Shown here: positions 1 through 13,004 of the stretch, piece by piece | How positions within the stretch are numbered: the stretch's first letter is position 1 | Layout: the number at the start of each line of letters is the position of its first letter | Assembly: GCA_965240325.2 (NCBI GenBank) | Contig: OZ251222.1 | Location: 3,596,001-3,660,000 of the forward strand | Source: Rebecca billardiae RCC1528 | Lineage: Eukaryota; Protista; Haptophyta | Reading direction: 5' to 3' | Length of the DNA stretch: 64,000 nt | Program-made: the position numbers and the translations under genes | Notes under the pieces: model-generated | What the model was told of the DNA's origin: nothing | What the model saw: only the letters and a program-made list of their open reading frames with translations | Databases searched by the model: none

Positions 1-760
1 GCGGTGGCGAGCTGGGCGGCGGTGGCGACGGCGGTGGCGATGGCGGCGGTGGCGGCGGCGGAGCTGGCGGCGGCGGGCTTGGTGGCGGGCTCGGAGGCGG
101 CGACGGCGGTGGCGGCGGTGGCGAGCTGGGCGGCGGTGGCGACGGCGGCGGCGATGGCGGCGGCGGCGGCGGCGGAGCTGGCGGCGGCGGGCTTGGTGGC
201 GGGCTCGGAGGCGGCGACGGCGGTGGCGGCGGTGGCGAGCTGGGCGGCGGTGGCGACGGCGGCGGCGATGGCGGCGGTGGCGGCGGCGGAGCTGGCGGCG
301 GCGGGCTTGGTGGCGGGCTCGGAGGCGGCGACGGCGGTGGCGGCGGTGGCGAGCTGGGCGGCGGTGGCGACGGCGGCGGCGATGGCGGCGGTGGCGGCGG
401 CGGAGCTGGTGGCGGCGGGCTTGGTGGCGGGCTCGGAGGCGGCGACGGCGGTGGCGGCGGTGGCGAGCTGGGCGGCGGTGGCGACGGCGGCGGCGATGGC
501 GGCGGTGGCGGCGGTGGAGCTGGCGGCGGCGGGCTTGGTGGCGGGCTCGGAGGTGGCGACGGCGGTGGCGGCGGTGGCGAGCTGGGCGGCGGTGGCGACG
601 GCGGTGGCGATGGCGGCGGTGGCGGCGGCGGAGCTGGCGGCGGCGGGCTTGGTGGCGGGCTCGGAGGCGGCGACGGCGGTGGCGGCGGTGGCGAGCTGGG
701 CGGCGGTGGCGACGGCGGCGGCGATGGCGGCGGCGGCGGCGGCGGAGCTGGCGGCGGCGG
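1..760. repeat. 114-bp (38-aa) coding tandem repeat, about 6.5 copies
   Basis: The unit gcggtggcgagctgggcggcggtggcgacg recurs at 1, 115, 229, 343, 457, 571 and 685. Confidence 0.9.
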
Positions 761-3700
761 GCTCGGCGGCGGGCTCGGCGGCGGGCTCGGCGGCGGGCTC
801 GGCGGAGGCGGCGGTGGCGGGCTCGGCGGCGGCGAGGGCGGCGGAAGCGGTGGCGGCGACGGCACGGCCGACGGCGGCGGGCTGGGCGGCGGCGACGGCG
901 GCGGGCTGGGCAGCGGCGAGGGTGGCGGGCTTGGCGGTGGTGACGGTGGAGCCGATGGCGGCGGCGACGGCGGCGGGCTCGGCGGCGGCGATGGCGGCGG
1001 CGGCGGCGGGCTCGGCGGCGGAGATGGCGGCTGCGACGGAAGTGGGCTCGGCGGTGGTGACGGTGGCGGCGGCGGCGGGCTCGGCGGTGGCGATGGCGGC
1101 TGCGACGGCGGCGGGCTTGGCGGTGGCGACGGCGGCGGTGACGGCGGCGGCGGCGGTGGGCTCGGCGGTGGAGATGGCGGCTGCGACGGCGGCGGACTCG
1201 GCGGTGGCGGTGGCGGTGGGCGCGCTGGCGGCGGGCTGGGCGGCGGGCTCGGCGGTGGCAACGGCGGCGGAGGCTGCGGGCTTGGCGGTGGAGACGGCGG
1301 TGGCAACGGCGGCGGGCTCGGCGTCGGCGACGGCGGCGGCGGCGGCGGGCTCGGCGGTGGAGACGGCGGTGGCGACGGCGGCGGGCTCGGCGGCGGGCTC
1401 GGCGGTGGCGGCGGCGGCGTTGGCGGCGGGCTCGGCGGTGGAGATGGCGGTGGCAACGGCGGCGGGCTCGGCGGCGGCGACGGCGGTGGAGGCGGCGGGC
1501 TCGGCGGTGGAGTCGGCGGTGGCGACGGCGGCGGGCTCGGCGGTGGCGGTGGCGGCGGGCTCGCCGGTGGCGGGCTCGCCGGCGGGCTCGGCGGTGGCGA
1601 CGGCGGCGGCGGCGGCGGGCTCGGCGGCGGAGATGGCGGCTGCGACGGAAGTGGGCTCGGCGGTGGTGACGGTGGCGGCGGCGGCGGGCTCGGCGGTGGC
1701 GATGGCGGCTGCGACGGCGGCGGGCTTGGCGGTGGCGACGGCGGCGGTGACGGCGGCGGCGGCGGTGGGCTCGGCGGTGGAGATGGCGGCTGCGACGGCG
1801 GCGGACTCGGCGGTGGCGGTGGCGGTGGGCGCGCTGGCGGCGGGCTGGGCGGCGGGCTCGGCGGTGGCAACGGCGGCGGAGGCTGCGGGCTTGGCGGTGG
1901 AGACGGCGGTGGCAACGGCGGCGGGCTCGGCGTCGGCGACGGCGGCGGCGGCGGCGGGCTCGGCGGTGGAGACGGCGGTGGCGACGGCGGCGGGCTCGGC
2001 GGCGGGCTCGGCGGTGGCGGCGGCGGCGTTGGCGGCGGGCTCGGCGGTGGAGATGGCGGTGGCAACGGCGGCGGGCTCGGCGGCGGCGACGGCGGTGGAG
2101 GCGGCGGGCTCGGCGGTGGAGTCGGCGGTGGCGACGGCGGCGGGCTCGGCGGTGGCGGTGGCGGCGGGCTCGCCGGTGGCGGGCTCGCCGGCGGGCTCGG
2201 CGGTGGCGACGGCGGCGGCGGCGGCGGGCTTGGCGGTGGAGATGGCGGTGGCGACGGCGGTGGGCTCGGCGGTGGCGGTGGCGGCGGGCTCGGCGGTGGA
2301 GGGCTTGGCGGCGGGCTCGGCGGCGGCAACGGTGGTGGTAGCGGCGGCGAGCGGGGGGGTGGTGGCGACGGCGGCGGCGATGGCGGCGGTGGCGGCGGCG
2401 GAGATGGCGGCGGCGGGCTGGGCGGCGGGCTCGGCGGCGGCGACGGCGGGGGCGGCGGTGGCGAGCTGGGTGGTGGTGGCGACGGCGGCGGCGATGGCGG
2501 CGGTGGCGGCGGCGGATTCGGCGGTGGCGGAGACGGCGGCGGGCTCGGCGGCGGCGACGGCGGAGGCGGCGGTGGCGAGCTGGGCGGCGGCGGTGACGGT
2601 GGCGGTGAAGGTGGTGGTGGCGGAGGTGGGCTGGGCGGCGGGCTTGGTGGTGGGGTGGGGGGCCGAGTCGGCGGCGGGCTGGGCGGCGGACTCGGCGGTG
2701 GGCTCAGCGGTGGCGCCGGAGGCGGGCTCGGCGGCGGGCTCGGCGGCGGGCTCGGGGGCGGGCTCGGGGGCGGAGTCGGGGGCGGACTGGGCGGAGGCGA
2801 CGACGGTGGACTCGGCGGTGGGCTGGGCGGAGGCGACGGCGGCGGGCTCGGCGGGGTGCTCGGTGGTGGGCTGGGCGGTGGGATCGGAGGCGGGCTCGGA
2901 GGTGGGCTGGGCGGCGGACTCGGCGGCGGTGGCGGCGGTGGACTCGGCGGAGGCGACGGCGGCGGATGTGGCGGCGGGCTGGGCGGTGGTGCAGACGGCG
3001 GGCTGGGCGGCGGGCTCGGAGGTGGGCTGGGCGGCGGGCTCGGGGGTGGGCTCGGAGGTCGACTGGGCGGCGGGCTGGGGGGCGGGCTGGGCGGCGCGCT
3101 CGGTGGTGGGCTCGGGGGGGGCGGCGGCAGCGGACTGGGCGGAGGCGACGGCGGGGGACTCGGAGGTGGGCTGGGTGGTGGCGACGGCGGTGGGCTCGGC
3201 GGCTGGCTCGGGGGCAGGCTGGGCGGCGGGCTTGGGGGGGGCGCCGGTGGCGGACTGGGCGGAGGCGACGGCGGTGGATTCGGCGGTGGGCTCGGCGGCA
3301 GCGACGGCGGCGGGCTCGGCGGCGGGCTCGAAGGTGGGCTGCGCGGCGGACTTTGGGGCGGGCTGGGAGGCGGCGACGGCGGCGGCGGAGGGAATGGCAA
3401 ATCTGGAAAGCTCAGGAGGGTGACTGGCGGCACGGCTGCGAGCAGCTCCGGGGTGCCGGTCCCGACGGAGCCACCCGCCGACGGCTGCCCGAGCTGGCCG
3501 TCCCCGTTCTTTCCCCTGTGGACGCAGCGGCGCGGCAGGGTCGTGCAGGCGGGTAAGCGCGCGACCCCACCACGCCGCCGCCGGGCGTGGCAGGCGGGCG
3601 AGCGCATGGCCTGGACACCACGCCGCCACCCATGCCAGCCAGCCGTCTTGGCCGCCACGCTTCGCGCGCGCGCTCCGGGCGCGCGGCGCGCCGGGCCGCG

Positions 3701-6700
3701 CACCAGCACTTGACGAGCGGCTCGTCGGGCGAGGTCGCGTCCGTGTACATACAGCACGTGTGGTACTCGCCAACGCCCACGCGAAGCACCGAGACGGGCG
3801 CGGCGCTCGACACGCTTATGGCGGGCAGGCTGGCGTCGAGGGGAAACACGGCTGATGTGTCGCTCTCGTCCAGGCCGAGGGAACCTTGTATGTTGAGGCC
3901 CCTGCGATCGCAAGCGAGCGGCAGGAGTGCGCGCACGCCGGGAGGCGGACAGGCCGCACCTCATGCATGTGCGGGCGTGCGAGCGCCCCCGCCGCGCGCG
4001 TGGAACGCCGCATGGATCGGTGCGTCAGCCGCCGTGCGCCCGACTGCGCGCGCACCAGCACTTGAGCTTGTTGCCGCTCGGGTCGGCCGAGTCCCAGTAC
4101 ACCGCGCACGCGTGATGGAGGTGGATGGAGATGTCGAGAGCGCCGGACGCGCCCCCAGCCGGATACAGGTCGAGCGGCCCCAACTGGTTGGCCTCGAAGG
4201 GATCATCGCCCAGGCTGTCCGTGCGGCTGCCTGCGAGCAGTGGGCGCGCCGCGCTCGCGCCGGACGTGAGGCGCGCGCGCGCCAAGCAAGCACGTGGGCG
4301 TGTGTCGCATGTGCGCGCGACACGCACCCCGCCCGGCCTGGGACCAGAGGTTGTAACCCCAGCACTTGATCGCGAGCGCGTCGGTCTCTGGGTCGCACGG
4401 CGCTCCGCACAGCAGGGCGCACGTCGAATGGCCACCGGCCGACACGCGCACCACGTTGAGCCCGGACTGGCTCACTTCGTGGAACAGGTAGACCTCAGGC
4501 AGCAAATTGCTCATGCCGCCATAGTCCAGCTTGCCGCGGTCGAATTGGTCGCCGTAGCCGAGCTGGCCGTAGTAGTTGTCGCCTGCGCGGCGATGGCGGC
4601 GGTTCGCGTGGACGCGCATACGGCCGAGCACAGGCGGCAGCGGCGTCAGCACGCCGCGAGCGCACCGCGCCAGCTCCACCTGGCCCGCCGAGATCGGCCG
4701 GGCTGGCCGGGCGTGCTGTGCGCGCGGGGGGCATCGCGCGAGCGCGCACCCCAGCACTTGAGCCGGGTGCCCACCTGAGCGTTCAGCACGACGATCGCGC
4801 ACGTGTGGTCCCGGCCAGCGTCGACATCGACCACCTGCAGCACGTCCGGGCCCAGTGCGACCACCTTCGGATAGCGCACGAAACTCTCGGCGGAGTAGCT
4901 CGTGCCGGTCTGGCCATTCCCATCGGCCCCGAAGCAGCTGAGCGCCGTCGTGCCCGCGGTCTCGTGCAGCACGCACGAATGGAACCTGCCGGCTGCCACC
5001 TTGAGAGCGCGCGCGCCCGCGCCCAGCGCCAGGCTGCGCCCCGAGTCGTACAGCGCGCCCGCGCGGTAGTCCTCGTAATCGCCCTGGCCGAGCTGACTTT
5101 GGCCGCCCCGACCGAAGCAGTACGCATCGCCCGAGGCCAGCACGACGCACGTGTGCTGTTCACCAGCGCCCACGTCCACGATGGGCTCGCCGCCAAAGTG
5201 CGCGTTGAGCGCGTCCGGGTGCGGCTCCGCCCAGAGCAACGGATCGGCGCCCTCGCCGGCCTCGCCGTAGAAGTTGCTGCCCCAGCAGGCGGTGGTGGCG
5301 AGTGCGCGCACGCACGTGCGATCGCCGCCGAGGGCGAGCTCCGTGACCGCGTTGGGCACGCCCGGCGGCGGCGGGCTCGGCGGCGGGCTCGACGGCGGGT
5401 GCGGTGGCAGGCTCGGCGGCGAGCTGGGCGGCGGCGGGCTCGGTGGTGGGCTGGGCGGCGGGCTCGGCGGCGGGCTGGGCGGCGGGCTCGGCGGCGGCGG
5501 GCTGGGCGGCGGGCTCGGTGGCGGCGGGCTCGGCGGCGGGCTCGGCGGCGGGGGCGGCGGCGGGCTGGGCGGCGGGCTGGGCGGTGGGCTGGGCGGCGGG
5601 CTCGGCGGTGGAGGTGGGCTCGGGGGCGGGCTGGGCGGCGGCGGGCTGGGCGGCGGGCTGGGCGGCGGAGGTGGGCTGGGTGGCGGGCTGGGCGGCGGGC
5701 TGGGCGGCGGGCTGGGCGGCGGGGACGGCGGCGGGCTGGGCGGCGGAGGTGGGCTGGGTGGCGGGCTGGGCGGCGGGCTGGGCGGCGGGCTGGGCGGCGG
5801 GCTGGGCGGCGGGCTGGGCGGCGGGCTGGGCGGCGGGGACGGCGGCGGGCTGGGCGGCGGAGGGCTGGGCGGCGGGGACGGCGGCGGGCTGGGCGGCGGG
5901 CTTGGCGGCGGGCTGGGCGGCGGGCTTGGCGGCGGGCTGGGCGGCGGGCTCGGCGGCGGGCTCGGCGGCGGGCCGGGCGGGCTGGGAGGCGGCGACGGCG
6001 GCGGTGGGAACGGCATGTCGGTGAAGCCAAGCGCCGGCACGGCTGCGAGCAGCTCCGGGGTGCCGGTCCCGACGGAGCCGATGGCAGTCGGCTGCCCGAG
6101 CCGGCCGTCCTTGTTCCATCCCCTGTGGGCGCAGCGGCACGGCGGCGAGCGAGCAGGCGGGTAAGCGCGCGACCCCACCACGCCGCCGCCGGGCGTGGCA
6201 GGCGGGCGAGCGCATGGCCTGGACACCACGCCGCCACCCATGCCAGCCAGCCGTCTTGGCCGCCACGCTTCGCGCGCGAGCGCCGGGCGCGCGGCGCGCC
6301 GGGCCGCGCACCAGCACTTGACGAGCGGATCGACGGGCGAGGTCGCGTCCGTGTACATGCAGCACGTGTGGTACTCGCCAACGCCCACGCGAAGCACCGA
6401 GACGGGCGAGGCGCTCGACACGCTTATGGCGGGCAGGCTGGCGTCGAGGGGAAACACGGCTGACGTGTCGCTCTCGTCCAGGCCGAGGGCGCCTTGTATG
6501 TTGCGGCCCCTGCGATCGCAAGCGAGCGGCAGGCGCGCGCGCACGCCGGGAGGCGGACAGGCCGCACCTCATGCATGTGCGGGCGGGCGAGCGCCCCCGC
6601 GCCGCGCGCGTGGAACGCCGCAAGGATCGGTGCGTCAGCCGCATCACGCGCCCCCGCCGCGCGCGCACCAGCACTTGAGCTTGTTGCCGCTCGGGTCGGC

Positions 6701-9700
6701 CGAGTCCCAGTACACCGCGCACGCGTGATGGAGGTGGATGGAGACGTCGAGAGCGCCATGCTGGGCGCCGATCGGGTGCAGGTCGATCGGCCCCAACTGG
6801 AAAACCTCGAAGGGGTCGTCGCCCACGTTGTCCGTGCTGCTGCCTGCAAGCAGTGGGCGCGCCGCGCTCGCGCCGGACGTGAGGCGCGCGCGCGCCAAGC
6901 AAGCACGTGAGCGTGTGTGGCGCGCGCGCGCAACACGCACCCTGCCCGGCCTGGGACCAGAGGTTGGAGCCCCAGCACTTGATCGCGAGCGCGTCGGTCT
7001 CGGAGTCGCACGGCAGTGCGCACAGCAGGGCGCACGTGGAATGGCCACCGGCCGACACGCGCACCGCGTCGACCCCATTCCCATTCTGGCTCACTTGGGG
7101 GTCCAGGCGGATCGGAGGCAGCCCGTCGCCCATCGTCGACGCTGACTCGCCGCGGTCTAGGACGTCGTCGTAGCCGAGCTGGCCGTAGTAGTTGTCGCCT
7201 GCGCGGCGATGGTGGCGGTTCGCGTGGACGCGCATACGGCCGAGCACAGGCGGCAGCGGCGTCAGCACGCCGCGAGCGCACCGCGCCAGCTCGACCTGGC
7301 CCGCCGAGATCGGCCGGGCTGGCCGGGCGTGCCGTACGCGCGGGGGGCATCGCGCGAGCGCGCACCCCAGCACTTGAGCCGGGTGCCCACAAAGAAGCTC
7401 ATCGACACGATCGCGCACGAGTGGTCCCGGCCAGTGTCCACATCGAGCACCTGCAGCACGTTCGCGCCCAGCGCGACCACCTTCGGATAGCGCACGAAAT
7501 TCTCGGCGGAGTTGCTCGTGCCGGTCTGGCCATTCCCATTGGACCCGAAGCAGCTGAGCGCCGTCGTGCCCGCGGTCTCGTGCAGCACGCACGAATGCAA
7601 CCTGCCGGCTGCCACCTTGAGAGCGCGCGCGCCCGCGCCCAGCGCCAGGCTGCGCCCCGAGTCGTACAGCGCGCCCGCGCGGTAGTCCTCGTAATCGCCC
7701 TGGCCGAGCTGACTTTGGCCGCCCCGACCGAAGCAGTACGCATCGCCCGAGGCCAGCACGACGCACGTGTGCCATTTGCCAGCGCTCGCGTCCACGATGA
7801 GCTCGCCGCCAAAGTGCGCGTTGAGCGCGTCCGGGTGCGGCTCCGCCCAGAGCAACGGATCGGCGCCCTCGCCGGCCTCGCCGTAAAAGTTGCTGCCCCA
7901 GCAGGCGGTGATGGCGAGTGCGCGCACGCACGTGCGATCGCCGCCGAGGGCGAGGTCCGTGACCGCGTTAGGCACGCCCGGCGGCGGCGGGCTCGGCGGC
8001 GGGCTCGGCGGCGGCGGGCTCGGCGGCGGGCTCGGCGGCGGCGGGCTGGGCGGCGGGCTGGGCGGTGGGCTGGGCGGCGGGCTCGGCGGTGGAGGTGGGC
8101 TCGGGGGCGGGCTGGGCGGCGGCGGGCTGGGCGGCGGGCTGGGCGGTGGAGGTGGGCTCGGGGGCGGGCTGGGCGGCGGCGGGCTGGGCGGCGGGCTGGG
8201 CGGTGGAGGTGGGCTCGGGGGCGGGCTGGGCGGCGGCGGGCTGGGCGGCGGGGACGGCGGCAGGCTGGGCGGCGGAGATGGGCTGGGGGGCGGCGGGCTG
8301 GGCGGCGGGCTGGGCGGCGGGGACGGCGGCGGGCTGGGCGGCGGGCTTGGCGGCGGGCTGGGCGGCGGGCTTGGCGGCGGGCTGGGCGGCGGGCTCGGCG
8401 GCGGGCTCGGCGGCGGGCCGGGCGGGCTGGGAGGCGGCGACGGCGGCGGTGGGAACGGCATGTCGGTGAAGCCAAGCGCCGGCACGGCTGCGAGCAGCTC
8501 CGGGGTGCCGGTCCCGACGGAGCCGATGGCAGTCGGCTGCCCGAGCCGGCCGTCCTTGTTCCATCCCCTGTGGGCGCAGTGGCACGGCGGCGAGCGAGCA
8601 GGCGGGTAAGCGCGCGAGCCCACCACGCCGCCGCCGGGCGTGGCAGGCGGGCAAGCGCATGGCCTGGACACCACGCCGCCACCCATGCCAGCCAGCCGTC
8701 TTGGCCGCCACGCTTCGCGCGCGCGCTCCGGGCGCGCGGCGCGCCGGGCCGCGCACCAGCACTTGACGAGCGGATCGACGGGCGAGGTCGCGTCCGTGTA
8801 CATACAGCACGTGTGGTACTCGCCAACGCCCACGCGAAGCACCGAGACGGGCGAGGCGCTCGACACGCTTATGGCGGGCAGGCTGGCGTCGAGGGGAAAC
8901 ACGGCTGACGTGTCGCTCTCGTCCAGGCCGAGGATGCCTTGGATGTTGAAACCCCTGAGATCGCAAGCGAGCGGCAGGCGCGCGCGCACGCCGGGAGGCG
9001 GACAGGCCGCACCTCATGCATGTGCGGGCGGGCGAGCGCCCCCGCCGCGCGCGTGGAACGCCGCATCGATCGGTGCGTCAGCCATCGCGCGCCCGACCGC
9101 GCGCGCACCAGCACTTGAGCTTGTTGCCGCTCGGGTCGGCCGAGTCCCAGTACACCGCGCACGCGTGATGGAGGTGGATGGAGACGTCGAGAGCGCCATG
9201 CTGGGCGCCGATCGGGTGCAGGTCGAGCGGCCCCAACTGGAAAACCTCGAAGGGGTCGTCGCCCACGTTGTCCGTGCTGCTGCCTGCGAGCAGTGGGCGC
9301 GCCGCGCTCGCGCCGGACGTGAGGCGCGCGCGCGCCAAGCAAGCACGTGAGCGTGTGTGGCGCGCGCGCGCAACACGCACCCTGCCCGGCCTGGGACCAG
9401 AGGTTGGAGCCCCAGCACTTGATCGCGAGCGCGTCGGTCTCTGGGTCGCACGGCAGTGCGCACAGCAGGGCGCACGTGGAATGGCCACCAGCCGACACGC
9501 GCACCGCGTCGACCCCATTCCCATTCTGGCTCACTTGGTGGTCCAGGCGGATCGGAGGCAGCCCGTCGCCCATCGTCGACGCTGACCCGCCGCGGTCTAG
9601 GACGTCGTCGTAGCCGAGCTGGCCGTAGTAGTTGTCGCCTGCGCGGCGATGGTGGCGGTTCGCGTGGACGCGCATACGGCCGAGCACAGGCGGCAGCGGC

Positions 9701-12700
9701 GTCAGCACGCCGCGAGCGCACCGCGCCAGCTCGACCTGGCCCGCCGAGATCGGCCGGGCTGGCCGGGCGTGCTGTGCGCGCGGGGGGCATCGCGCGAGCG
9801 CGCACCCCAGCACTTGAGCCGGGTGCCCACAAAGAAGCTCATCGACACGATCGCGCACGAGTGGTCCCGGCCAGTGTCCACATCGAGCACCTGCAGCACG
9901 TTCGCGCCCAGCGCGACCACCTTCGGATAGCGCACGAAATTCTCGGCGGAGTTGCTCGTGCCGGTCTGGCCATTCCCATTGGACCCGAAGCAGCTGAGCG
10001 CCGTCGTGCCCGCGGTCTCGTGCAGCACGCACGAATGCAACCTGCCGGCTGCCACCTTGAGAGCGCGCGCGCCCGCGCCCAGCGCCAGGCTGCGCCCCGA
10101 GTCGTACAGCGCGCCCGCGCGGTAGTCCTCGTAATCGCCCTGGCCGAGCTGACTTTGGCCGCCCCGACCGAAGCAGTACGCATCGCCCGAGGCCAGCACG
10201 ACGCACGTGTGCCATTTGCCAGCGCTCGCGTCCACGATGGGCTCGCCGCCAAAGTGCGCGTTGAGCGCGTCCGGGTGCGGCTCCGCCCAGAGCAACGGAT
10301 CGGCGCCCTCGCCGGCCTCGCCGTAGAAGTTGCTGCCGAAGCAGGCGGTGATGGCGAGAGCGCGCACGCACGTGCGATCGCCGCCGAGGGCGAGGTCCGT
10401 GACCGCGTTGGGCACGCCCGGCGGCCGCGGGCTCGGCGGCGGGCTCGGCGGCGGGCTCGGCGGCGGGCGCGGTGGCGGGCTCGGCGGCGGGCTGGGCGGC
10501 GGCGGGCTCGGTGGTGGGCTCGGCGGCGGGCTGGGCGGCGGGCTCGGTGGTGGTGACGGTGGCGGGCTGGGCGGGGGGAACGGCGGTGGTGACAGCGGCG
10601 GGCTGAGCGGCGAGCTGGGTGGTGGTGGCGACGGCGGCGGCGATGGCGGTGGCGGCGGCGGCGGGCTTGGCGGTGGCGGGCTTGGGGGCGGGCTCGGGGG
10701 TGGCGACGGCGGCGGCGTCGGCGGCTGCGTCGGCGGCGGGCTGGGCGGTGGCGACGGCGAGGGCGGCGGCGAGGGCGGTGGCGACGGCGGATGCGACGGC
10801 GGCGGGCTTGGAGGAGGCGACGGCGAGGGCGGCGGCGAGGGCGGCGGCGTCGGCGGATGCGACGGCGGCGGGCTGGGCGGTGGCGACGGCGAGGGCGGCG
10901 GCGAGGGCGGCGGCGACGGCGGCTGCGTCGGCGGCGGGCTGGGCGGTGGCGACGGCGAGGGCGGCGGCGAGGGCGGCGGCGACGGCGGATGCGACGGCGG
11001 CGGGCTTGGAGGAGGCGACGGCGAGGGCGGCGGCGAGGGCGGTGGCGTCGGCGGATGCGACGGCGGCGGTGATGGTGGCGGCGACAGCGAGGGCGGCGGC
11101 GAGGGCGGTGGCGACGGCGGATGCGACGGCGGCGGGCTTGGAGGAGGCGACGGCGAGGGCGGCGGCGAGGGCGGCGGCGTCGGCGGATGCGACGGCGGCG
11201 GGCTGGGCGGCGGCGAGGGCGAGGGCGGCGGCGAGCGCGGCGGCGACGGCGGATGCGACGGCGGCGGGCTGGGCGGCGGCGACGGCGAGGGCGGCGGCGA
11301 GGGCGGCGGCGACGGCGGCTGCGACGGCGGCGGGCTTGGAGGAGGCGACGGCGAGGGCGGCGGCGAGGGCGGCGGCGTCGGCGGATGCGACGGCGGCGGG
11401 CTGGGCGGTGGCGACGGCGAGGGCGGCGGCGAGGGCGGCGGCGACGGCGGCTGCGTCGGCGGCGGGCTGGGCGGTGGCGACGGCGAGGGCGGCGGCGAGG
11501 GCGGCGGCGACGGCGGATGCGACGGCGGCGGGCTTGGAGGAGGCGACGGCGAGGGCGGCGGCGAGGGCGGTGGCGTCGGCGGATGCGACGGCGGCGGTGA
11601 TGGTGGCGGCGACAGCGAGGGCGGCGGCGAGGGCGGTGGCGACGGCGGATGCGACGGCGGCGGGCTTGGAGGAGGCGACGGCGAGGGCGGCGGCGAGGGC
11701 GGCGGCGTCGGCGGATGCGACGGCGGCGGGCTGGGCGGCGGCGAGGGCGAGGGCGGCGGCGAGCGCGGCGGCGACGGCGGATGCGACGGCGGCGGGCTGG
11801 GCGGCGGCGACGGCGAGGGCGGCGGCGAGGGCGGCGGCGACGGCGGCTGCGACGGCGGCGGGCTTGGAGGAGGCGACGGCGAGGGCGGCGGCGAGGGCGG
11901 CGGCGTCGGCGGATGCGACGGCGGCGGGCTGGGCGGCGGCGACGGCGAGGGCGGCGGCGAGCGCGGCGGCGACGGCGGATGCGACGGCGGCGGGCTGGGC
12001 GGCGGCGACGGCGAGGGCGGCGGCGAGGGCGGCGGCGACGGCGGCTGCGACGGCGGCGGGCTTGGAGGAGGCGACGGCGAGGGCGGCGGCGAGGGCGGCG
12101 GCGACGGCGGATGCGACGGCGGCGGGCTTGGAGGAGGCGACGGCGAGGGCGGCGGCGAGGGCGGCGGCGACGGCGGCTGCGTCGGCGGCGGGCTGGGCGG
12201 TGGCGACGGCGAGGGCGGCGGCGAGCGCGGCGGCGACGGCGGATGCGACGGCGGTGGGCTGGGCGGTGGCGACGGCGAGGGCGGCGGCGAGGGCGGCGGC
12301 GAGGGCGGCTGCGACGGCGGCGGGCTTGGAGGAGGCGACGGATGAGGAGGTGGAGACGGCGGCGGCGTCGGCGGCTGCGTCGGCGGTGGGCTGGGCGGTG
12401 GCGACGGCGAGGGCGGCGGCGAGGGCGGCGGCGACGGCGGCTGCGACGGCGGCGGGCTTGGAGGAGGCGACGGCGAGGGCGGCGGCGAGGGCGGCGGCGA
12501 CGGCGGCTGCGACGGCGGCGGGCTGGGCGGCGGCGACGGCGAGGGCGGCGGCGAGGGCGGTGGGCTCGGCGGCGCGCTCGGCTGCGCGGACACGATGGAT
12601 GCTTGAACACTCAGCAGCAGCGCGCACATGCCCAGCAGGCTGCGCTTCGATGCTGATCCGCGCCCCGCAGCGCCGCCCTGCGAGTAGTGGCTGCGCCGCG

Positions 12701-13004
12701 CAGGTGCGCGAAGGCGAGACGTGGCCCCTGCGGGCATCGGCCTTGAAGGTGGGCTTGGAGGGGTACGCTGGCTCTGTGTTTCACCAGCGTGCACGCACAC
12801 GCGCGCGCGCACGCCAGCACAGGGCGCGGGAGCGCGCGTGCCGCGCATTCCGCGCGTGGTCAGTGTGCGTGCGCCATGATCGCCCCGCGCGAGGCGCGCA
12901 CAGGCACGAGGTTTACAGCGCCGCGCATGCGGTGTCACCTTGGGGAGCCCGCGGGCGGCTGCGAGTGCGCAGAAGAAGATGATCGCACTCGTCAGCATCG
13001 TCAT
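1..13004 (-). CDS. Giant secreted Ser/Pro-rich (extensin-like) protein with three tandem RCC1/BLIP-II-like beta-propeller modules; multi-exon, 3' end beyond the window start
   Basis: Signal-peptide-like start MTMLTSAIIFFCALAAARG at ATG 13004, followed by a possible GT donor at 12938. SPPP rods lie at about 12580-10420, 8450-7980, 6005-5365 and 3390-1. Each module has seven xAGxxHTC...C(W/F)GxNxxGQLG-type repeats. Module-3 introns 4583-4749, 4231-4327, 3902-4055 and 3516-3703 (GT-AG) restore the frame. The 5' exon structure is uncertain. Confidence 0.8.
1010..2230. repeat. 609-bp near-perfect tandem duplication within the Pro-rich rod
   Basis: gagatggcggctgcgacggaagtggg occurs at 1021 and 1630, and the downstream sequence appears identical. 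Confidence 0.85.
3400..10420 (-). repeat. Three tandem ~2-kb RCC1-module copies (exons plus introns) separated by variable SPPP linkers
   Basis: Copies at about 3400-5365, 6005-7980 and 8450-10420. The period is 2440 bp between 6961 and 9401. Intron sequences are nearly identical between copies. Confidence 0.95.
10740..12560. repeat. Coding minisatellite (66-bp-type PSPPPSPPPSHPP units) with a 528-bp higher-order duplication
   Basis: Regular gagggcggcggcgagggc spacing. The variant gatggtggcggcgacagcgag recurs 528 bp apart (about 11071 and 11599). Confidence 0.85.

What the first reader, a model, noticed from the sequence alone, without database searches (positions are those of the whole stretch)
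1..13004. Giant beads-on-a-rod secreted protein: extensin-like SPPP rods carrying repeated RCC1-type propellers
Seen: a signal-peptide-like start, a ~700-aa Ser/Pro rod, then three modules of seven Cys-paired RCC1/BLIP-II-like repeats. Linkers are about 155, 215 and more than 1100 aa, and the gene runs off the window. Known: Ser-Pro(n) tracts form hydroxyproline-glycosylated polyproline-II rods in extensins, pherophorins and algal agglutinins, and seven RCC1 repeats make one propeller. Inferred: a multivalent cell-surface filament or adhesin (scale, hair, haptonema or matrix protein) that spaces binding domains at defined distances. I do not recognise this architecture as a characterised family.
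Basis: partly seen in the sequence, partly recalled or inferred. Interest (0 to 1): 0.8.

Follow-up and report, generated by a model that had tools for sequence, protein, structure and literature searches.

The report
Giant algal surface protein: propellers on rods
The stretch is the first third of one enormous gene (about 10,250 amino acids) of a very GC-rich alga. It encodes a cell-surface protein that carries three RCC1-type propeller "heads" on stiff proline-serine rods. The design is built from known parts, has not been described in this combination, and recurs elsewhere in this genome.

Summary
On the minus strand I find a signal-peptide-like start, a 722-aa Ser/Pro rod, and three 458-462-aa modules. 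Each module has seven C-X9-19-C[W/F]G RCC1 repeats, and the linkers are 153, 210 and more than 1,123 aa.

Twelve GTGCG...CAG introns sit at the same four positions in each module. Removing them rebuilds the C-W-G-x-N-x-x-G-x-L-G motifs and gives 3,601 codons without a stop. Each linker lies in one exon with the propeller halves on both sides, so the modules belong to one gene.

The gene continues about 20.3 kb beyond the window. It carries a rod of about 2,590 aa in all, an SEA-like domain, a 1,500-aa globular region, another 1,600-aa rod, about 50 Cys-rich repeats, a transmembrane exon and an IQ-like tail. Three single-base indels in the tail rod must be assembly errors for this one-chain reading to hold.

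No relative outside this genome exceeds 36% identity. The Cys-paired repeat is the common extracellular RCC1_2 or "crinkly" type. Paralogs on contigs 8 and 29 and a EukProt protein share the propeller-plus-proline-linker grammar. This scan also noted RCC1-on-rod genes elsewhere in this genome.

My reading is a new variant of known kinds, with no expression data and no known ligand.

The parts
12585..12629 (-). Candidate start codon and signal peptide MCALLLSVQASIVSA, with predicted cleavage before QPSAPP
   Evidence: Reading of the sequence and a hydropathy peak. It has the same ...A|Q-(S/P) junction as the C8 paralog's canonical signal peptide.
12939..13004 (-).
   Evidence: Same frame as the rod, strongly hydrophobic, GC3 0.86 against flat GC downstream. 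I could not decide between the starts without RNA data.
10419..12584 (-). Rod 1: 722 aa Ser/Pro tract, mostly 28 copies of a 22-aa unit PSPPPSPSPPPSPPPS(Q/H)PP(S/T)PP
   Evidence: TRF finds period 66, 28.2 copies, 91% matches and 0% indels. Variation by codon position is 17/9/72. Composition.
8438..10418 (-). Propeller module 1 (458 aa, 7 blades). Exons 10418-9806, 9638-9381, 9283-9109, 8954-8757 and 8567-8438. Introns 9805-9639, 9380-9284, 9108-8955 and 8756-8568.
   Evidence: GTGCG...CAG introns, whose removal restores the CWGxNxxGxLG motifs. Pfam RCC1_2 and RCC1. Model and Foldseek. Seven C-X9-19-C[WF]G motifs.
7979..8437 (-). Linker 1: 153 aa Ser/Pro rod, in one exon (8567-7366) with blade 7 of module 1 and blades 1-3.5 of module 2
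   Evidence: TRF periods 12, 39 and 57.
5993..7978 (-). Propeller module 2 (458 aa). Exons 7978-7366, 7198-6941, 6843-6669, 6509-6312 and 6122-5993. Introns 7365-7199, 6940-6844, 6668-6510 and 6311-6123.
   Evidence: Compared with module 1 it is 98.6% identical in exons and 96.9% in introns, with a 5-nt indel in intron 3.
5363..5992 (-). Linker 2: 210 aa Ser/Pro rod, in one exon (6122-4750) with blade 7 of module 2 and blades 1-3.5 of module 3
   Evidence: TRF period 12.
3371..5362 (-). Propeller module 3 (462 aa). Exons 5362-4750, 4582-4328, 4230-4056, 3901-3704 and 3515-3371. Introns 4749-4583, 4327-4231, 4055-3902 and 3703-3516.
   Evidence: Compared with module 1 it is 90.3% identical in exons and 95.6% in introns. 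dN/dS is about 1.0.
1..3370 (-). Tail rod: at least 1,123 aa of Ser/Pro in the window, becoming a 114-nt (38-aa) tandem unit. It continues about 4.3 kb past the window start, for about 2,590 aa in all.

Best explanation
Window 1-12,629 (minus strand) is the 5' third of one gene of about 33 kb and 15 exons. The gene spans G000:C1 from about 3,575,700 to 3,608,629 and encodes a type I cell-surface glycoprotein of about 10,250 residues in a GC-rich photosynthetic eukaryote.

Proposed mechanism:
1. An N-terminal signal peptide sends the chain into the secretory pathway.
2. The Ser-Pro3-4 tracts form extended polyproline-II rods, probably hydroxylated and O-glycosylated. At 0.31 nm per residue they would measure about 224, 47, 65 and 800 nm.
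3. These rods carry three seven-bladed RCC1_2 or "crinkly"-type propellers. Each blade is braced by a Cys pair in a C-X9-19-C[W/F]G motif.
4. The propellers act as ligand-binding heads, held far from the membrane and about 50-65 nm apart.
5. The chain continues through an SEA-like domain with an invariant Gly-Ser at the beta2-beta3 turn, which is a possible self-cleaving, force-sensitive joint.
6. It then runs through a 1,500-aa globular region, a 1,600-aa rod and about 50 Cys-rich 35-aa repeats. It ends in a single TM helix and a short cytoplasmic tail with an IQ-like motif.

The most likely role is a long-reach adhesion or recognition receptor of the cell surface.

Shown here: the gene structure, reading-frame continuity, RCC1 identity, the Cys motif, the coding frame of the rods, and the TM exon.

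Inferred: rod conformation and glycosylation, disulfides, ligand binding, self-cleavage and signalling. The one-chain reading also assumes that three 1-nt indels in the tail rod are assembly errors.
For: - Twelve introns, all GTGCG...CAG, sit at the same four positions in each module. Removing them recreates the canonical C-W-G-x-N-x-x-G-x-L-G motifs and gives 3,601 codons without a stop.
- Each linker is in one exon with the flanking propeller halves.
- Pfam RCC1_2 (2e-15) and RCC1 (2e-12) score above their cut-offs. The best PDB sequence match is UVR8 at 6.6e-34. The half-module model (pLDDT 71.6) matches UVR8, RPGR, HERC2 and RCC1.
- All eight Cys of blades 1-4 are invariant across nine paralogous modules. 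There are seven Cys-paired motifs per module. The same motif defines the extracellular CR4 propeller (PMC4617170) and is the rule in bacterial secreted RCC1_2 proteins.
- Third-position variation shows that the Ser/Pro frame is the coding one.
- Downstream, a 5,200-aa open frame holds real domains. The TM exon TILGLVASIVCFVGSCTLAFIVLRRRRKAFLE is flanked by the same intron type. The last exon carries an IQ motif (Pfam E 5e-4).
- The length of the giant exon fits its entry and exit phases only if the net -1 of the three indels is corrected.
- The SEA-like domain model (pLDDT 83.9) matches IA-2 at Z 8.7 and the MUC16 SEA domain at Z 8.0, with G56-S57 in the beta2-beta3 turn.
- The paralogs use the same grammar with canonical signal peptides. 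The C8 gene runs in one open frame into TIG, REJ (2.7e-34) and GPS (7.7e-11).
- The genome has at least 54 matches to the P4H-type oxygenase domain.
Against: - There is no expression or protein evidence. No transcript-derived protein of this gene exists in the public sets searched.
- As assembled, the tail rod has three 1-nt indels at about window -2796, -3133 and -3724. Read literally, they lead to Arg- and Ala-rich sequence and a stop near -4560, which cuts the propeller part off from the TM anchor.
- The start codon is ambiguous.
- dN/dS between module 3 and modules 1-2 is about 1.0, which would also fit relaxed constraint.
- The full seven-blade closure and the disulfides were not modelled, because the spliced module was not joined for any search or fold.
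- The SEA-like fold match has Z 7-8.7, a range where ferredoxin-like folds often match by arrangement alone.
- No ligand is known.
Confidence: 0.62

Rival explanations
1. It is a structural protein of the cell covering or extracellular matrix (scale, knob-scale, hair or wall component) and not a receptor. In this reading the rods and propellers are building blocks that are shed or cross-linked, with no signalling role.
For: - Half of the chain is Ser/Pro rod of the kind found in wall glycoproteins.
- RCC1-repeat proteins have been recovered from diatom biosilica proteomes (10.1101/2021.09.18.460806).
- An RCC1-domain protein was listed among proposed coccolith proteins (PMC11685980).
- A self-cleaving SEA-like joint would allow shedding.
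Against: - The rods have no Tyr or Lys cross-linking motifs.
- The chain ends in a TM helix and an IQ-like cytoplasmic tail.
- The C8 paralog is fused to a polycystin-1-type REJ/GPS module, which is a receptor architecture.
Confidence: 0.2
2. The three frameshifts in the tail rod are real. The gene would then give a secreted, unanchored product of about 5,100 aa ending in out-of-frame Arg- and Ala-rich sequence, or it is a decaying pseudogene. The downstream 5,200-aa open frame would be a remnant.
For: - The indels are in the assembly as given.
- All three frames are open across the rods, so a shifted reading is not stopped quickly.
- dN/dS is about 1 for module 3.
Against: - All 12 window introns (and the two flanking the TM exon) keep the GTGCG...CAG boundaries, there is no stop in 3,601 spliced codons, and the scaffold Cys are invariant.
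- The rods show third-position variation.
- The indels lie in about 45 near-identical 114-nt units, a context that short reads cannot polish.
- Correcting them gives exactly the phase required at both ends of the exon.
- The downstream frame has no start or signal peptide of its own.
Confidence: 0.12
3. The three modules are separate genes, or the triplication is an assembly artefact.
For: Modules 1 and 2 are 98.6% identical in exons. The region is highly repetitive.
Against: - There is no stop, start or signal sequence between modules, and the linkers share exons with both neighbours.
- Modules 1 and 2 differ at 19 exon positions and 19 intron alignment columns (12 substitutions and 7 gap columns, from a 5-nt length difference in intron 3).
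- The modules are flanked by rods of different unit structure (66-nt, 57/12-nt and 12-nt periods). Module 3 is only about 90% identical.
Confidence: 0.05

Closest known systems
CRINKLY4 (CR4/ACR4) receptor ectodomain of plants
   Same: It is an extracellular seven-repeat RCC1-like propeller in which each repeat carries a C(X~10)CWG motif thought to form an intrablade disulfide (PMC4617170). It sits on a single-pass membrane protein.
   Different: CR4 has one propeller, a TNFR-like Cys-rich domain and a cytoplasmic kinase. This gene has three propellers separated by long Ser/Pro rods, no TNFR-like domain or kinase, and about 10,250 aa. CR4 structures did not appear in my PDB sequence search, which listed only matches up to E 0.001.
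Bacterial secreted multi-propeller RCC1_2 proteins (Pfam PF13540) and BLIP-II
   Same: The closest sequence relatives (27-36% identity) are giant bacterial proteins from Myxococcota, 'Deltaproteobacteria' and Actinomycetota. They carry many Cys-paired RCC1_2 propellers.
   Different: The bacterial proteins join propellers to Ig, FN3 or CarboxypepD_reg domains and have no long Ser/Pro rods. BLIP-II is a single small propeller. By my recollection it lacks the Cys pairs, as the CR4 paper also says of its templates.
Hydroxyproline-rich rod-and-head glycoproteins (extensins, Volvox pherophorins, Chlamydomonas sexual agglutinins)
   Same: They have long Ser-Pro(n) tracts expected to form glycosylated polyproline-II shafts that carry globular heads, and they are secreted.
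   Different: These rods lack Tyr cross-linking motifs. The heads are RCC1 propellers. The chain is TM-anchored and about three times longer. Homology of the heads was not tested and is not expected. Hydroxylation is untested.
Membrane-tethered mucins (MUC1, MUC16) and other SEA-domain surface proteins
   Same: They have a very long O-glycosylation-type low-complexity ectodomain, an SEA-fold domain with Gly-Ser at the beta2-beta3 turn, one TM helix and a short tail. SEA domains self-cleave and come apart under force (PMC10556640).
   Different: Here the SEA-like domain lies mid-chain between two rods and not next to the membrane. There is no sequence match to Pfam SEA. The fold match is only moderate (Z 7.4-8.7), and cleavage is untested.
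EukProt protein P0018 (1,983 aa, species not given) and the paralogs on C8 and C29 of this genome
   Same: All share the same grammar: a signal peptide, then repeated Cys-paired RCC1 propellers joined by Pro/Ser linkers. P0018 also ends in a TM helix, and the C8 gene ends in a REJ/GPS receptor-type module.
   Different: Their linkers are mostly 25-125 aa, although C8 also has one of 1,220 aa. P0018's propellers are 45-53% identical to bacterial ones but only about 34% to this gene's. Their membrane-proximal domains also differ. C8 has TIG, REJ and GPS. P0018's proximal domain shows no similarity to the SEA-like domain.

Membership tests
RCC1 / RCC1_2 repeat beta-propeller (Pfam PF00415, PF13540) | Repeats match the family profiles above the curated cut-off | tested here: met
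   RCC1_2 scores 56.4 bits (cut-off 22) and RCC1 47.9 bits (cut-off 21.7) on exon 1 of module 1. The same holds for module 2. The later short exons give only weak hits (E 0.03-0.05).
RCC1 / RCC1_2 repeat beta-propeller (Pfam PF00415, PF13540) | Seven repeats per domain, closing into a seven-bladed propeller | tested here: inconclusive
   There are seven C[WF]G-x-N-x-x-G motifs per module. A model of blades 1-3.5 superposes on half of UVR8 and RCC1 (TMq about 0.7, TMt about 0.4). Ring closure was not modelled because the spliced module was not joined for folding.
CRINKLY4-type receptor | C(X~10)CWG motif in each of seven repeats (PMC4617170) | tested here: met
   C-X9-19-C[W/F]G occurs in 7 of 7 repeats in all three modules. 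The Cys are invariant in nine paralogous modules.
CRINKLY4-type receptor | TNFR-like Cys-rich domain after the propeller, and a cytoplasmic protein kinase | tested here: not met
   Blade 7 runs directly into a Ser/Pro linker. Pfam finds no TNFR or kinase hit in the regions scanned downstream (the rods and short junctions were not scanned), and the cytoplasmic tail has only an IQ-like motif.
Extensin / hydroxyproline-rich glycoprotein | Repeated Ser-Pro3-5 motifs | tested here: met
   SPPP counts are 117, 31, 43 and 174 in the four rods. Pro is 68-76% and Ser 19-24% of residues.
Extensin / hydroxyproline-rich glycoprotein | Tyr-containing cross-linking motifs (YXY, VYK) | tested here: not met
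   Tyr is not among the six commonest residues of any rod (the sixth is at most 1%), and none is seen in the printed rod translations.
Extensin / hydroxyproline-rich glycoprotein | Prolyl 4-hydroxylation and O-arabinosylation or O-galactosylation | not testable with these tools
   Plausibility only. The genome has at least 54 matches to the P4H-type 2OG-Fe(II) oxygenase domain PF13640.
SEA-domain membrane mucin-like protein | SEA fold with a Gly-Ser cleavage site in the beta2-beta3 turn | tested here: inconclusive
   The model has pLDDT 83.9 and topology beta-alpha-beta-beta-alpha-beta, with invariant G56-S57 between strands 48-54 and 58-67. The top structural matches are SEA-type ectodomains: IA-2 at Z 8.7, MUC16 SEA at Z 8.0 and 7.4, and PCDH15 MAD12, Gpr126 and TMPRSS6 SEA at Z 6.8-7.7. 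Z is near the background level, there is no Pfam hit, and cleavage is untested.
SEA-domain membrane mucin-like protein | Single TM helix and short cytoplasmic tail | tested here: met
   A TM exon flanked by GTGCG...CAG introns is followed by RRRRK and a last exon of about 177 aa. This holds only if the three tail-rod indels are errors.

The most novel reading that the evidence does not exclude
The protein is a micrometre-long, force-gated "fishing-line" receptor. RCC1 heads at the far end of glycosylated polyproline rods would capture a ligand on prey, a mate, a bacterium or a surface. Tension along the rods would pull apart a self-cleaved SEA-like joint, and the membrane stump would signal through its IQ/calmodulin tail. 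In this alga, RCC1 heads would then form a modular recognition family plugged onto different self-cleaving mechanosensory anchors: SEA-like here and polycystin-type REJ/GPS on contig 8. That would be an independent algal counterpart of animal mucins, polycystins and adhesion GPCRs.
Probability: 0.15. Interest if true: 0.85.

Novelty: new variant of a known kind. Interest (0 to 1): 0.58.

Why it matters
Almost nothing is known about the surface proteins that non-model marine algae use to touch prey, mates, bacteria and viruses.

If it is expressed, this gene would be among the longest surface proteins I know of. Its rods alone would span about 1.7 micrometres if fully extended, which I recall is a substantial fraction of the diameter of a small flagellate alga. 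It would also show that the extracellular, disulfide-braced RCC1 propeller serves as a reusable recognition head in a eukaryote. That domain is otherwise known from plant CR4 receptors and from many uncharacterised bacterial surface proteins.

The pairing of such heads with self-cleaving anchor modules gives concrete, testable hypotheses about algal mechanosensing and adhesion. The anchor here is SEA-like, and in the paralog it is REJ/GPS.

There is also a practical point. All three reading frames stay open across the rods, and one non-coding frame is open for 7,750 codons. Standard gene callers are therefore likely to mis-annotate this whole class of genes.

Tried and rejected
- **Close homologs outside the genome: none found.**
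  - Two word-index searches covering candidate lengths 220-700 and 517-1,646 aa gave at most 34% identity.
  - An exhaustive profile search of 1.84 billion representatives gave 118,972 RCC1 hits. The top 150 reached at most 36% identity.
  - Caveat: that list is ranked by summed repeat score, with a cut-off of about 353 bits. A single-module relative of 50-60% identity could therefore sit below it.
- **The many RCC1 hits on contig 31 as members of the same family: rejected.** They are cytoplasmic, F-box-like RCC1 proteins without a signal peptide or Cys pairs.
- **Differences between module 3 and module 1 concentrated in loops: not supported for exon 1.** The counts are 11 of 87 strand residues against 12 of 120 non-strand residues (p = 0.66).
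- **A donor copy elsewhere in the genome explaining module 3's divergent exon 2: none.** The best matches are modules 1 and 2 at 69-71%.
- **P0018's membrane-proximal domain related to the SEA-like domain: no.** hhalign probability is 0.1%.
- **Pfam on rod 1, the SEA-like domain and the Cys-rich 35-aa repeats: no significant hit**. TMEM132 (E 3e-5, below cut-off) and cohesin (E 0.009) in the 1,500-aa region are weak.
- **PDB sequence search with the SEA-like profile: nothing**.
- **Literature searches:** "RCC1" mostly returned Roscoff culture strain numbers. No paper describing this architecture was found.
- **Not done:** the spliced (joined) module was not sent to any search or fold. Exons were searched by reference one by one. 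Joining was done only inside a local script, to count codons, stops and motifs.
- **Organism:** species identity was not established. The at least 51 LHC genes show only that it is photosynthetic. The contig is not human.

Full report
**Setting.** The first 13 kb of the window are 73-85% G+C, with a strong G excess on the plus strand. The gene therefore lies on the minus strand, where Pro codons give C-rich coding sequence. The window is G000:C1:3,596,001-3,660,000 of a 72-Mb, 41-contig assembly. The genome has spliceosomal introns and at least 51 nuclear LHC genes, so it is a photosynthetic eukaryote. I did not establish the species. Other notes of this scan guess a haptophyte or pavlovophyte. 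The contig is not human.

**Observation.**
- a hydrophobic N-terminus;
- a long Ser/Pro tract;
- three blocks of Cys-containing RCC1-like repeats, each broken into five frame pieces;
- Ser/Pro tracts between the blocks and after the last one.

The four frame changes per block are introns of 167, 97, 154-159 and 188-189 nt. All 12 begin GTGCG and end CAG, and they sit at identical positions in the three blocks. Three of the four fall inside the C-W-G triplet. Splicing recreates the canonical C-W-G-x-N-x-x-G-x-L-G motif each time (KCWG|DNYYGQLG, KCW|GFNIQGILG, KCW|GWNKDGRLG).

I joined the exons only in a local script, for counting. They give 3,601 codons with no stop, divided as follows:

| Segment | Residues | Length |
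|---|---|---|
| Signal peptide | about 1-15 | about 15 aa |
| Rod 1 | 16-737 | 722 aa |
| Module 1 | 738-1195 | 458 aa |
| Linker 1 | 1196-1348 | 153 aa |
| Module 2 | 1349-1806 | 458 aa |
| Linker 2 | 1807-2016 | 210 aa |
| Module 3 | 2017-2478 | 462 aa |
| Tail rod (to window edge) | 2479-3601 | at least 1,123 aa |

**One gene, real coding sequence.**
- Each linker lies in a single exon (8567-7366 and 6122-4750). That exon also carries the last half-blade of one module and blades 1-3.5 of the next. The modules therefore cannot be separate genes without unseen internal promoters.
- The Ser/Pro frame is truly coding. Among the 28 in-register copies of the 66-nt unit of rod 1, minor-variant counts are 17, 9 and 72 at codon positions 1, 2 and 3. 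The copies share ancestry, so these are not independent events, but the skew is clear.
- The triplication is not an assembly duplication. Modules 1 and 2 differ at 19 exon positions and in the introns (12 substitutions plus a 5-nt length difference), module 3 is about 90% identical, and the flanking rods have different unit structures.

**What the heads are.**
- Pfam RCC1_2 (E 2e-15) and RCC1 (E 2e-12) pass their cut-offs on a module's first exon.
- A profile of nine paralogous first exons finds UVR8, RPGR, HERC1/2 and RCC1 in the PDB (best E 6.6e-34).
- An AlphaFold model of that exon (pLDDT 71.6, pTM 0.74) superposes on half of those propellers (Foldseek E 2e-10, TMq about 0.7, TMt about 0.4).
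- Each module has exactly seven C-X9-19-C[W/F]G motifs and 17 Cys. The eight Cys of blades 1-4 are invariant in all nine paralogous modules.
- This motif defines the extracellular "crinkly" repeats of plant CR4 receptors, where the Cys pair is thought to brace each blade by a disulfide (PMC4617170). It is also the rule in giant secreted bacterial RCC1_2 proteins.

The heads are therefore the ordinary extracellular, Cys-paired branch of the RCC1 superfamily. I did not fold or search the joined module.

**Relatives.** Outside this genome nothing is close.
- The word-index searches gave at most 34% identity.
- An exhaustive profile search of 1.84 billion representatives gave at most 36% identity among the top 150.
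- That list is ranked by summed repeat score. It excludes any protein with two or more close modules, but not a single-module relative of 50-60% identity.
- The best hits are bacterial, from Myxococcota, 'Deltaproteobacteria' and Actinomycetota.
- One hit is eukaryotic: P0018 from EukProt. It has a signal peptide, four Cys-paired propellers joined by Pro/Ser linkers of 25-125 aa, and a C-terminal TM helix. Its propellers are 45-53% identical to bacterial ones.

Inside the genome the grammar recurs.
- On C8, a canonical signal peptide (...VTA|QNPPPS) is followed by five propellers with 31-58-aa linkers, then a 1,220-aa rod and a sixth propeller. The same 3,216-aa open frame continues into TIG, REJ (E 2.7e-34) and GPS (E 7.7e-11) domains, a polycystin-1-type receptor module.
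- On C29, a signal peptide is followed by many propellers with short Pro linkers.
- The numerous RCC1 hits on C31 are a different, cytoplasmic F-box-like family.

**The rest of the gene.** I fetched 30 kb beyond the window start.
- The tail rod continues as about 45 near-identical 114-nt units.
- It then runs into a 100-aa globular domain, a short rod and a 1,500-aa globular region. That region has weak TMEM132 (E 3e-5), cohesin and Big_2 hits.
- Next come a 1,600-aa rod and about 50 copies of a 35-aa repeat, GCTDxxAxNYDxxAxxDDGSC, which has no Pfam match. A helical insert and a short Pro-rich stretch follow.
- Two further GTGCG...CAG introns then flank a TM exon (TILGLVASIVCFVGSCTLAFIVLRRRRKAFLE). 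The last exon has an IQ-like motif (Pfam E 5e-4, just under the cut-off) and a stop near window -20,302.
- The total is about 10,250 aa in 15 exons over about 33 kb.

**The main caveat.** Three single-base indels (-1, -1 and +1) lie inside the 114-nt array at about -2,796, -3,133 and -3,724, and they shift the Ser/Pro frame. With them corrected, the giant exon has exactly the length class (1 mod 3) that its entry and exit phases require. Read literally, translation drifts into Arg- and Ala-rich sequence and stops near -4,560. I take them as assembly errors in an array that cannot be polished, but this needs reads.

**The SEA-like joint.**
- The 100-aa domain has at least 59 copies in this genome, many in giant open frames.
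- An alignment of ten copies shows an invariant Gly-Ser followed by a hydrophobic strand.
- The model (pLDDT 83.9) is beta-alpha-beta-beta-alpha-beta, with Gly56-Ser57 in the beta2-beta3 turn.
- The best structural matches are SEA-type ectodomains: IA-2 at Z 8.7, MUC16 SEA at Z 8.0 and 7.4, and dystroglycan, PCDH15 MAD12, Gpr126 and TMPRSS6 SEA.
- Z values of 7-8.7 are near background for ferredoxin-like folds, so this is a supported lead and not proof.
- SEA domains self-cleave at this turn and separate under force (PMC10556640).

**Mechanism.** Shown: a secretory start, coding Ser/Pro rods, three RCC1_2 propellers in one reading frame, and a downstream TM exon.

From established knowledge, the polyproline-II rise is about 0.31 nm per residue. 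The rods would then be about 224, 47, 65 and 800 nm long, and all rods together about 1.7 micrometres. The genome has at least 54 P4H-type oxygenase domain matches, so hydroxylation is plausible but untested.

Inferred: the propellers are binding heads held far from the membrane at fixed spacing, on a long-reach adhesion or recognition receptor. The pairing of RCC1 heads with self-cleaving anchors (SEA-like here, REJ/GPS on C8) hints at force sensing.

**Unexplained.** Between module 3 and modules 1-2, exons have diverged about twice as much as introns. Counting substitutions only, from the figures, that is about 8.1% against 4.3%. With gap columns it is 90.3% against 95.6% identity. dN/dS is about 1.0 overall and 1.2-1.5 in exons 1 and 2. 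No donor copy explains this, and the changes are not loop-biased in exon 1. Diversifying selection and relaxed constraint cannot be told apart with three copies.

**Verdict.** The gene is a new variant built from known kinds: an extracellular RCC1_2 or crinkly propeller, hydroxyproline-rich-type rods, and a mucin-like SEA-plus-TM anchor. It belongs to a family in this genome that the scan has also noted elsewhere. No expression data or ligand exist.

Noticed in passing
L011:5332-5670 (-), which is window about -4,340 to -4,680. Paralogs are in L026-L036.: A domain of about 100 aa with an invariant Gly-Ser at a beta-hairpin and an SEA-like predicted fold (IA-2 Z 8.7, MUC16 SEA Z 8.0). It has at least 59 copies in the genome, many in tandem inside open frames of 7,750 to 21,132 codons (C36, C21, C37, C32). 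There is no Pfam or PDB sequence match.
   Followed up: partly
L012:980-5800 (-), which is window about -14,200 to -19,020: About 50 copies of a 35-aa Cys-rich repeat, GCTDxxAxNYDxxAxxDDGSC, split by a roughly 270-aa helical insert. None reaches a Pfam cut-off.
   Followed up: no
L011, window about -2,796, -3,133 and -3,724 (G000:C1 about 3,593,204, 3,592,867 and 3,592,276): Three single-base indels (-1, -1, +1) lie in otherwise near-identical 114-nt units of the tail rod. They shift the Ser/Pro frame and are probably assembly errors. If they are real, the protein is truncated before its membrane anchor.
   Followed up: partly
G000:C8:2,073,600-2,098,500 (+), in L014-L017: A paralogous gene. 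It has a canonical signal peptide, five RCC1 propellers with 31-58-aa Pro/Ser linkers, a 1,220-aa rod and a sixth propeller. One open frame then continues into TIG, REJ (E 2.7e-34) and GPS (E 7.7e-11), a polycystin-1-like receptor module.
   Followed up: partly
G000:C29:1,026,168-1,034,000 (+), in L022: Another giant gene. A signal peptide is followed by many Cys-paired RCC1 propellers, largely intronless, joined by short Pro-rich linkers and then a long Ser/Pro tract.
   Followed up: no
G000:C31 (for example L018-L021): Dozens of ORFs of about 500 aa combine an F-box-like N-terminus with classical RCC1 repeats that lack Cys pairs. This is a separate, apparently cytoplasmic, expanded family concentrated on one contig.
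   Followed up: partly
window 3,371-10,418 (-): Between module 3 and modules 1-2, exons diverged about twice as much as the introns between them. Exon 2 is 81% identical, while the flanking introns are 99% and 94%. dN/dS is about 1.0-1.5.
   Followed up: partly
window 1-3,815 and L011-L012 (-): All three reading frames stay open across the Ser/Pro rods. A non-coding frame is open for 7,750 codons, reading as Ala-rich or Arg/His-rich repeats. ORF-based gene calling is therefore unreliable here.
   Followed up: no
whole genome G000: There are at least 54 matches to the prolyl-4-hydroxylase-type 2OG-Fe(II) oxygenase domain PF13640. This is a large family, consistent with heavy use of hydroxyproline-rich proteins.
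   Followed up: no
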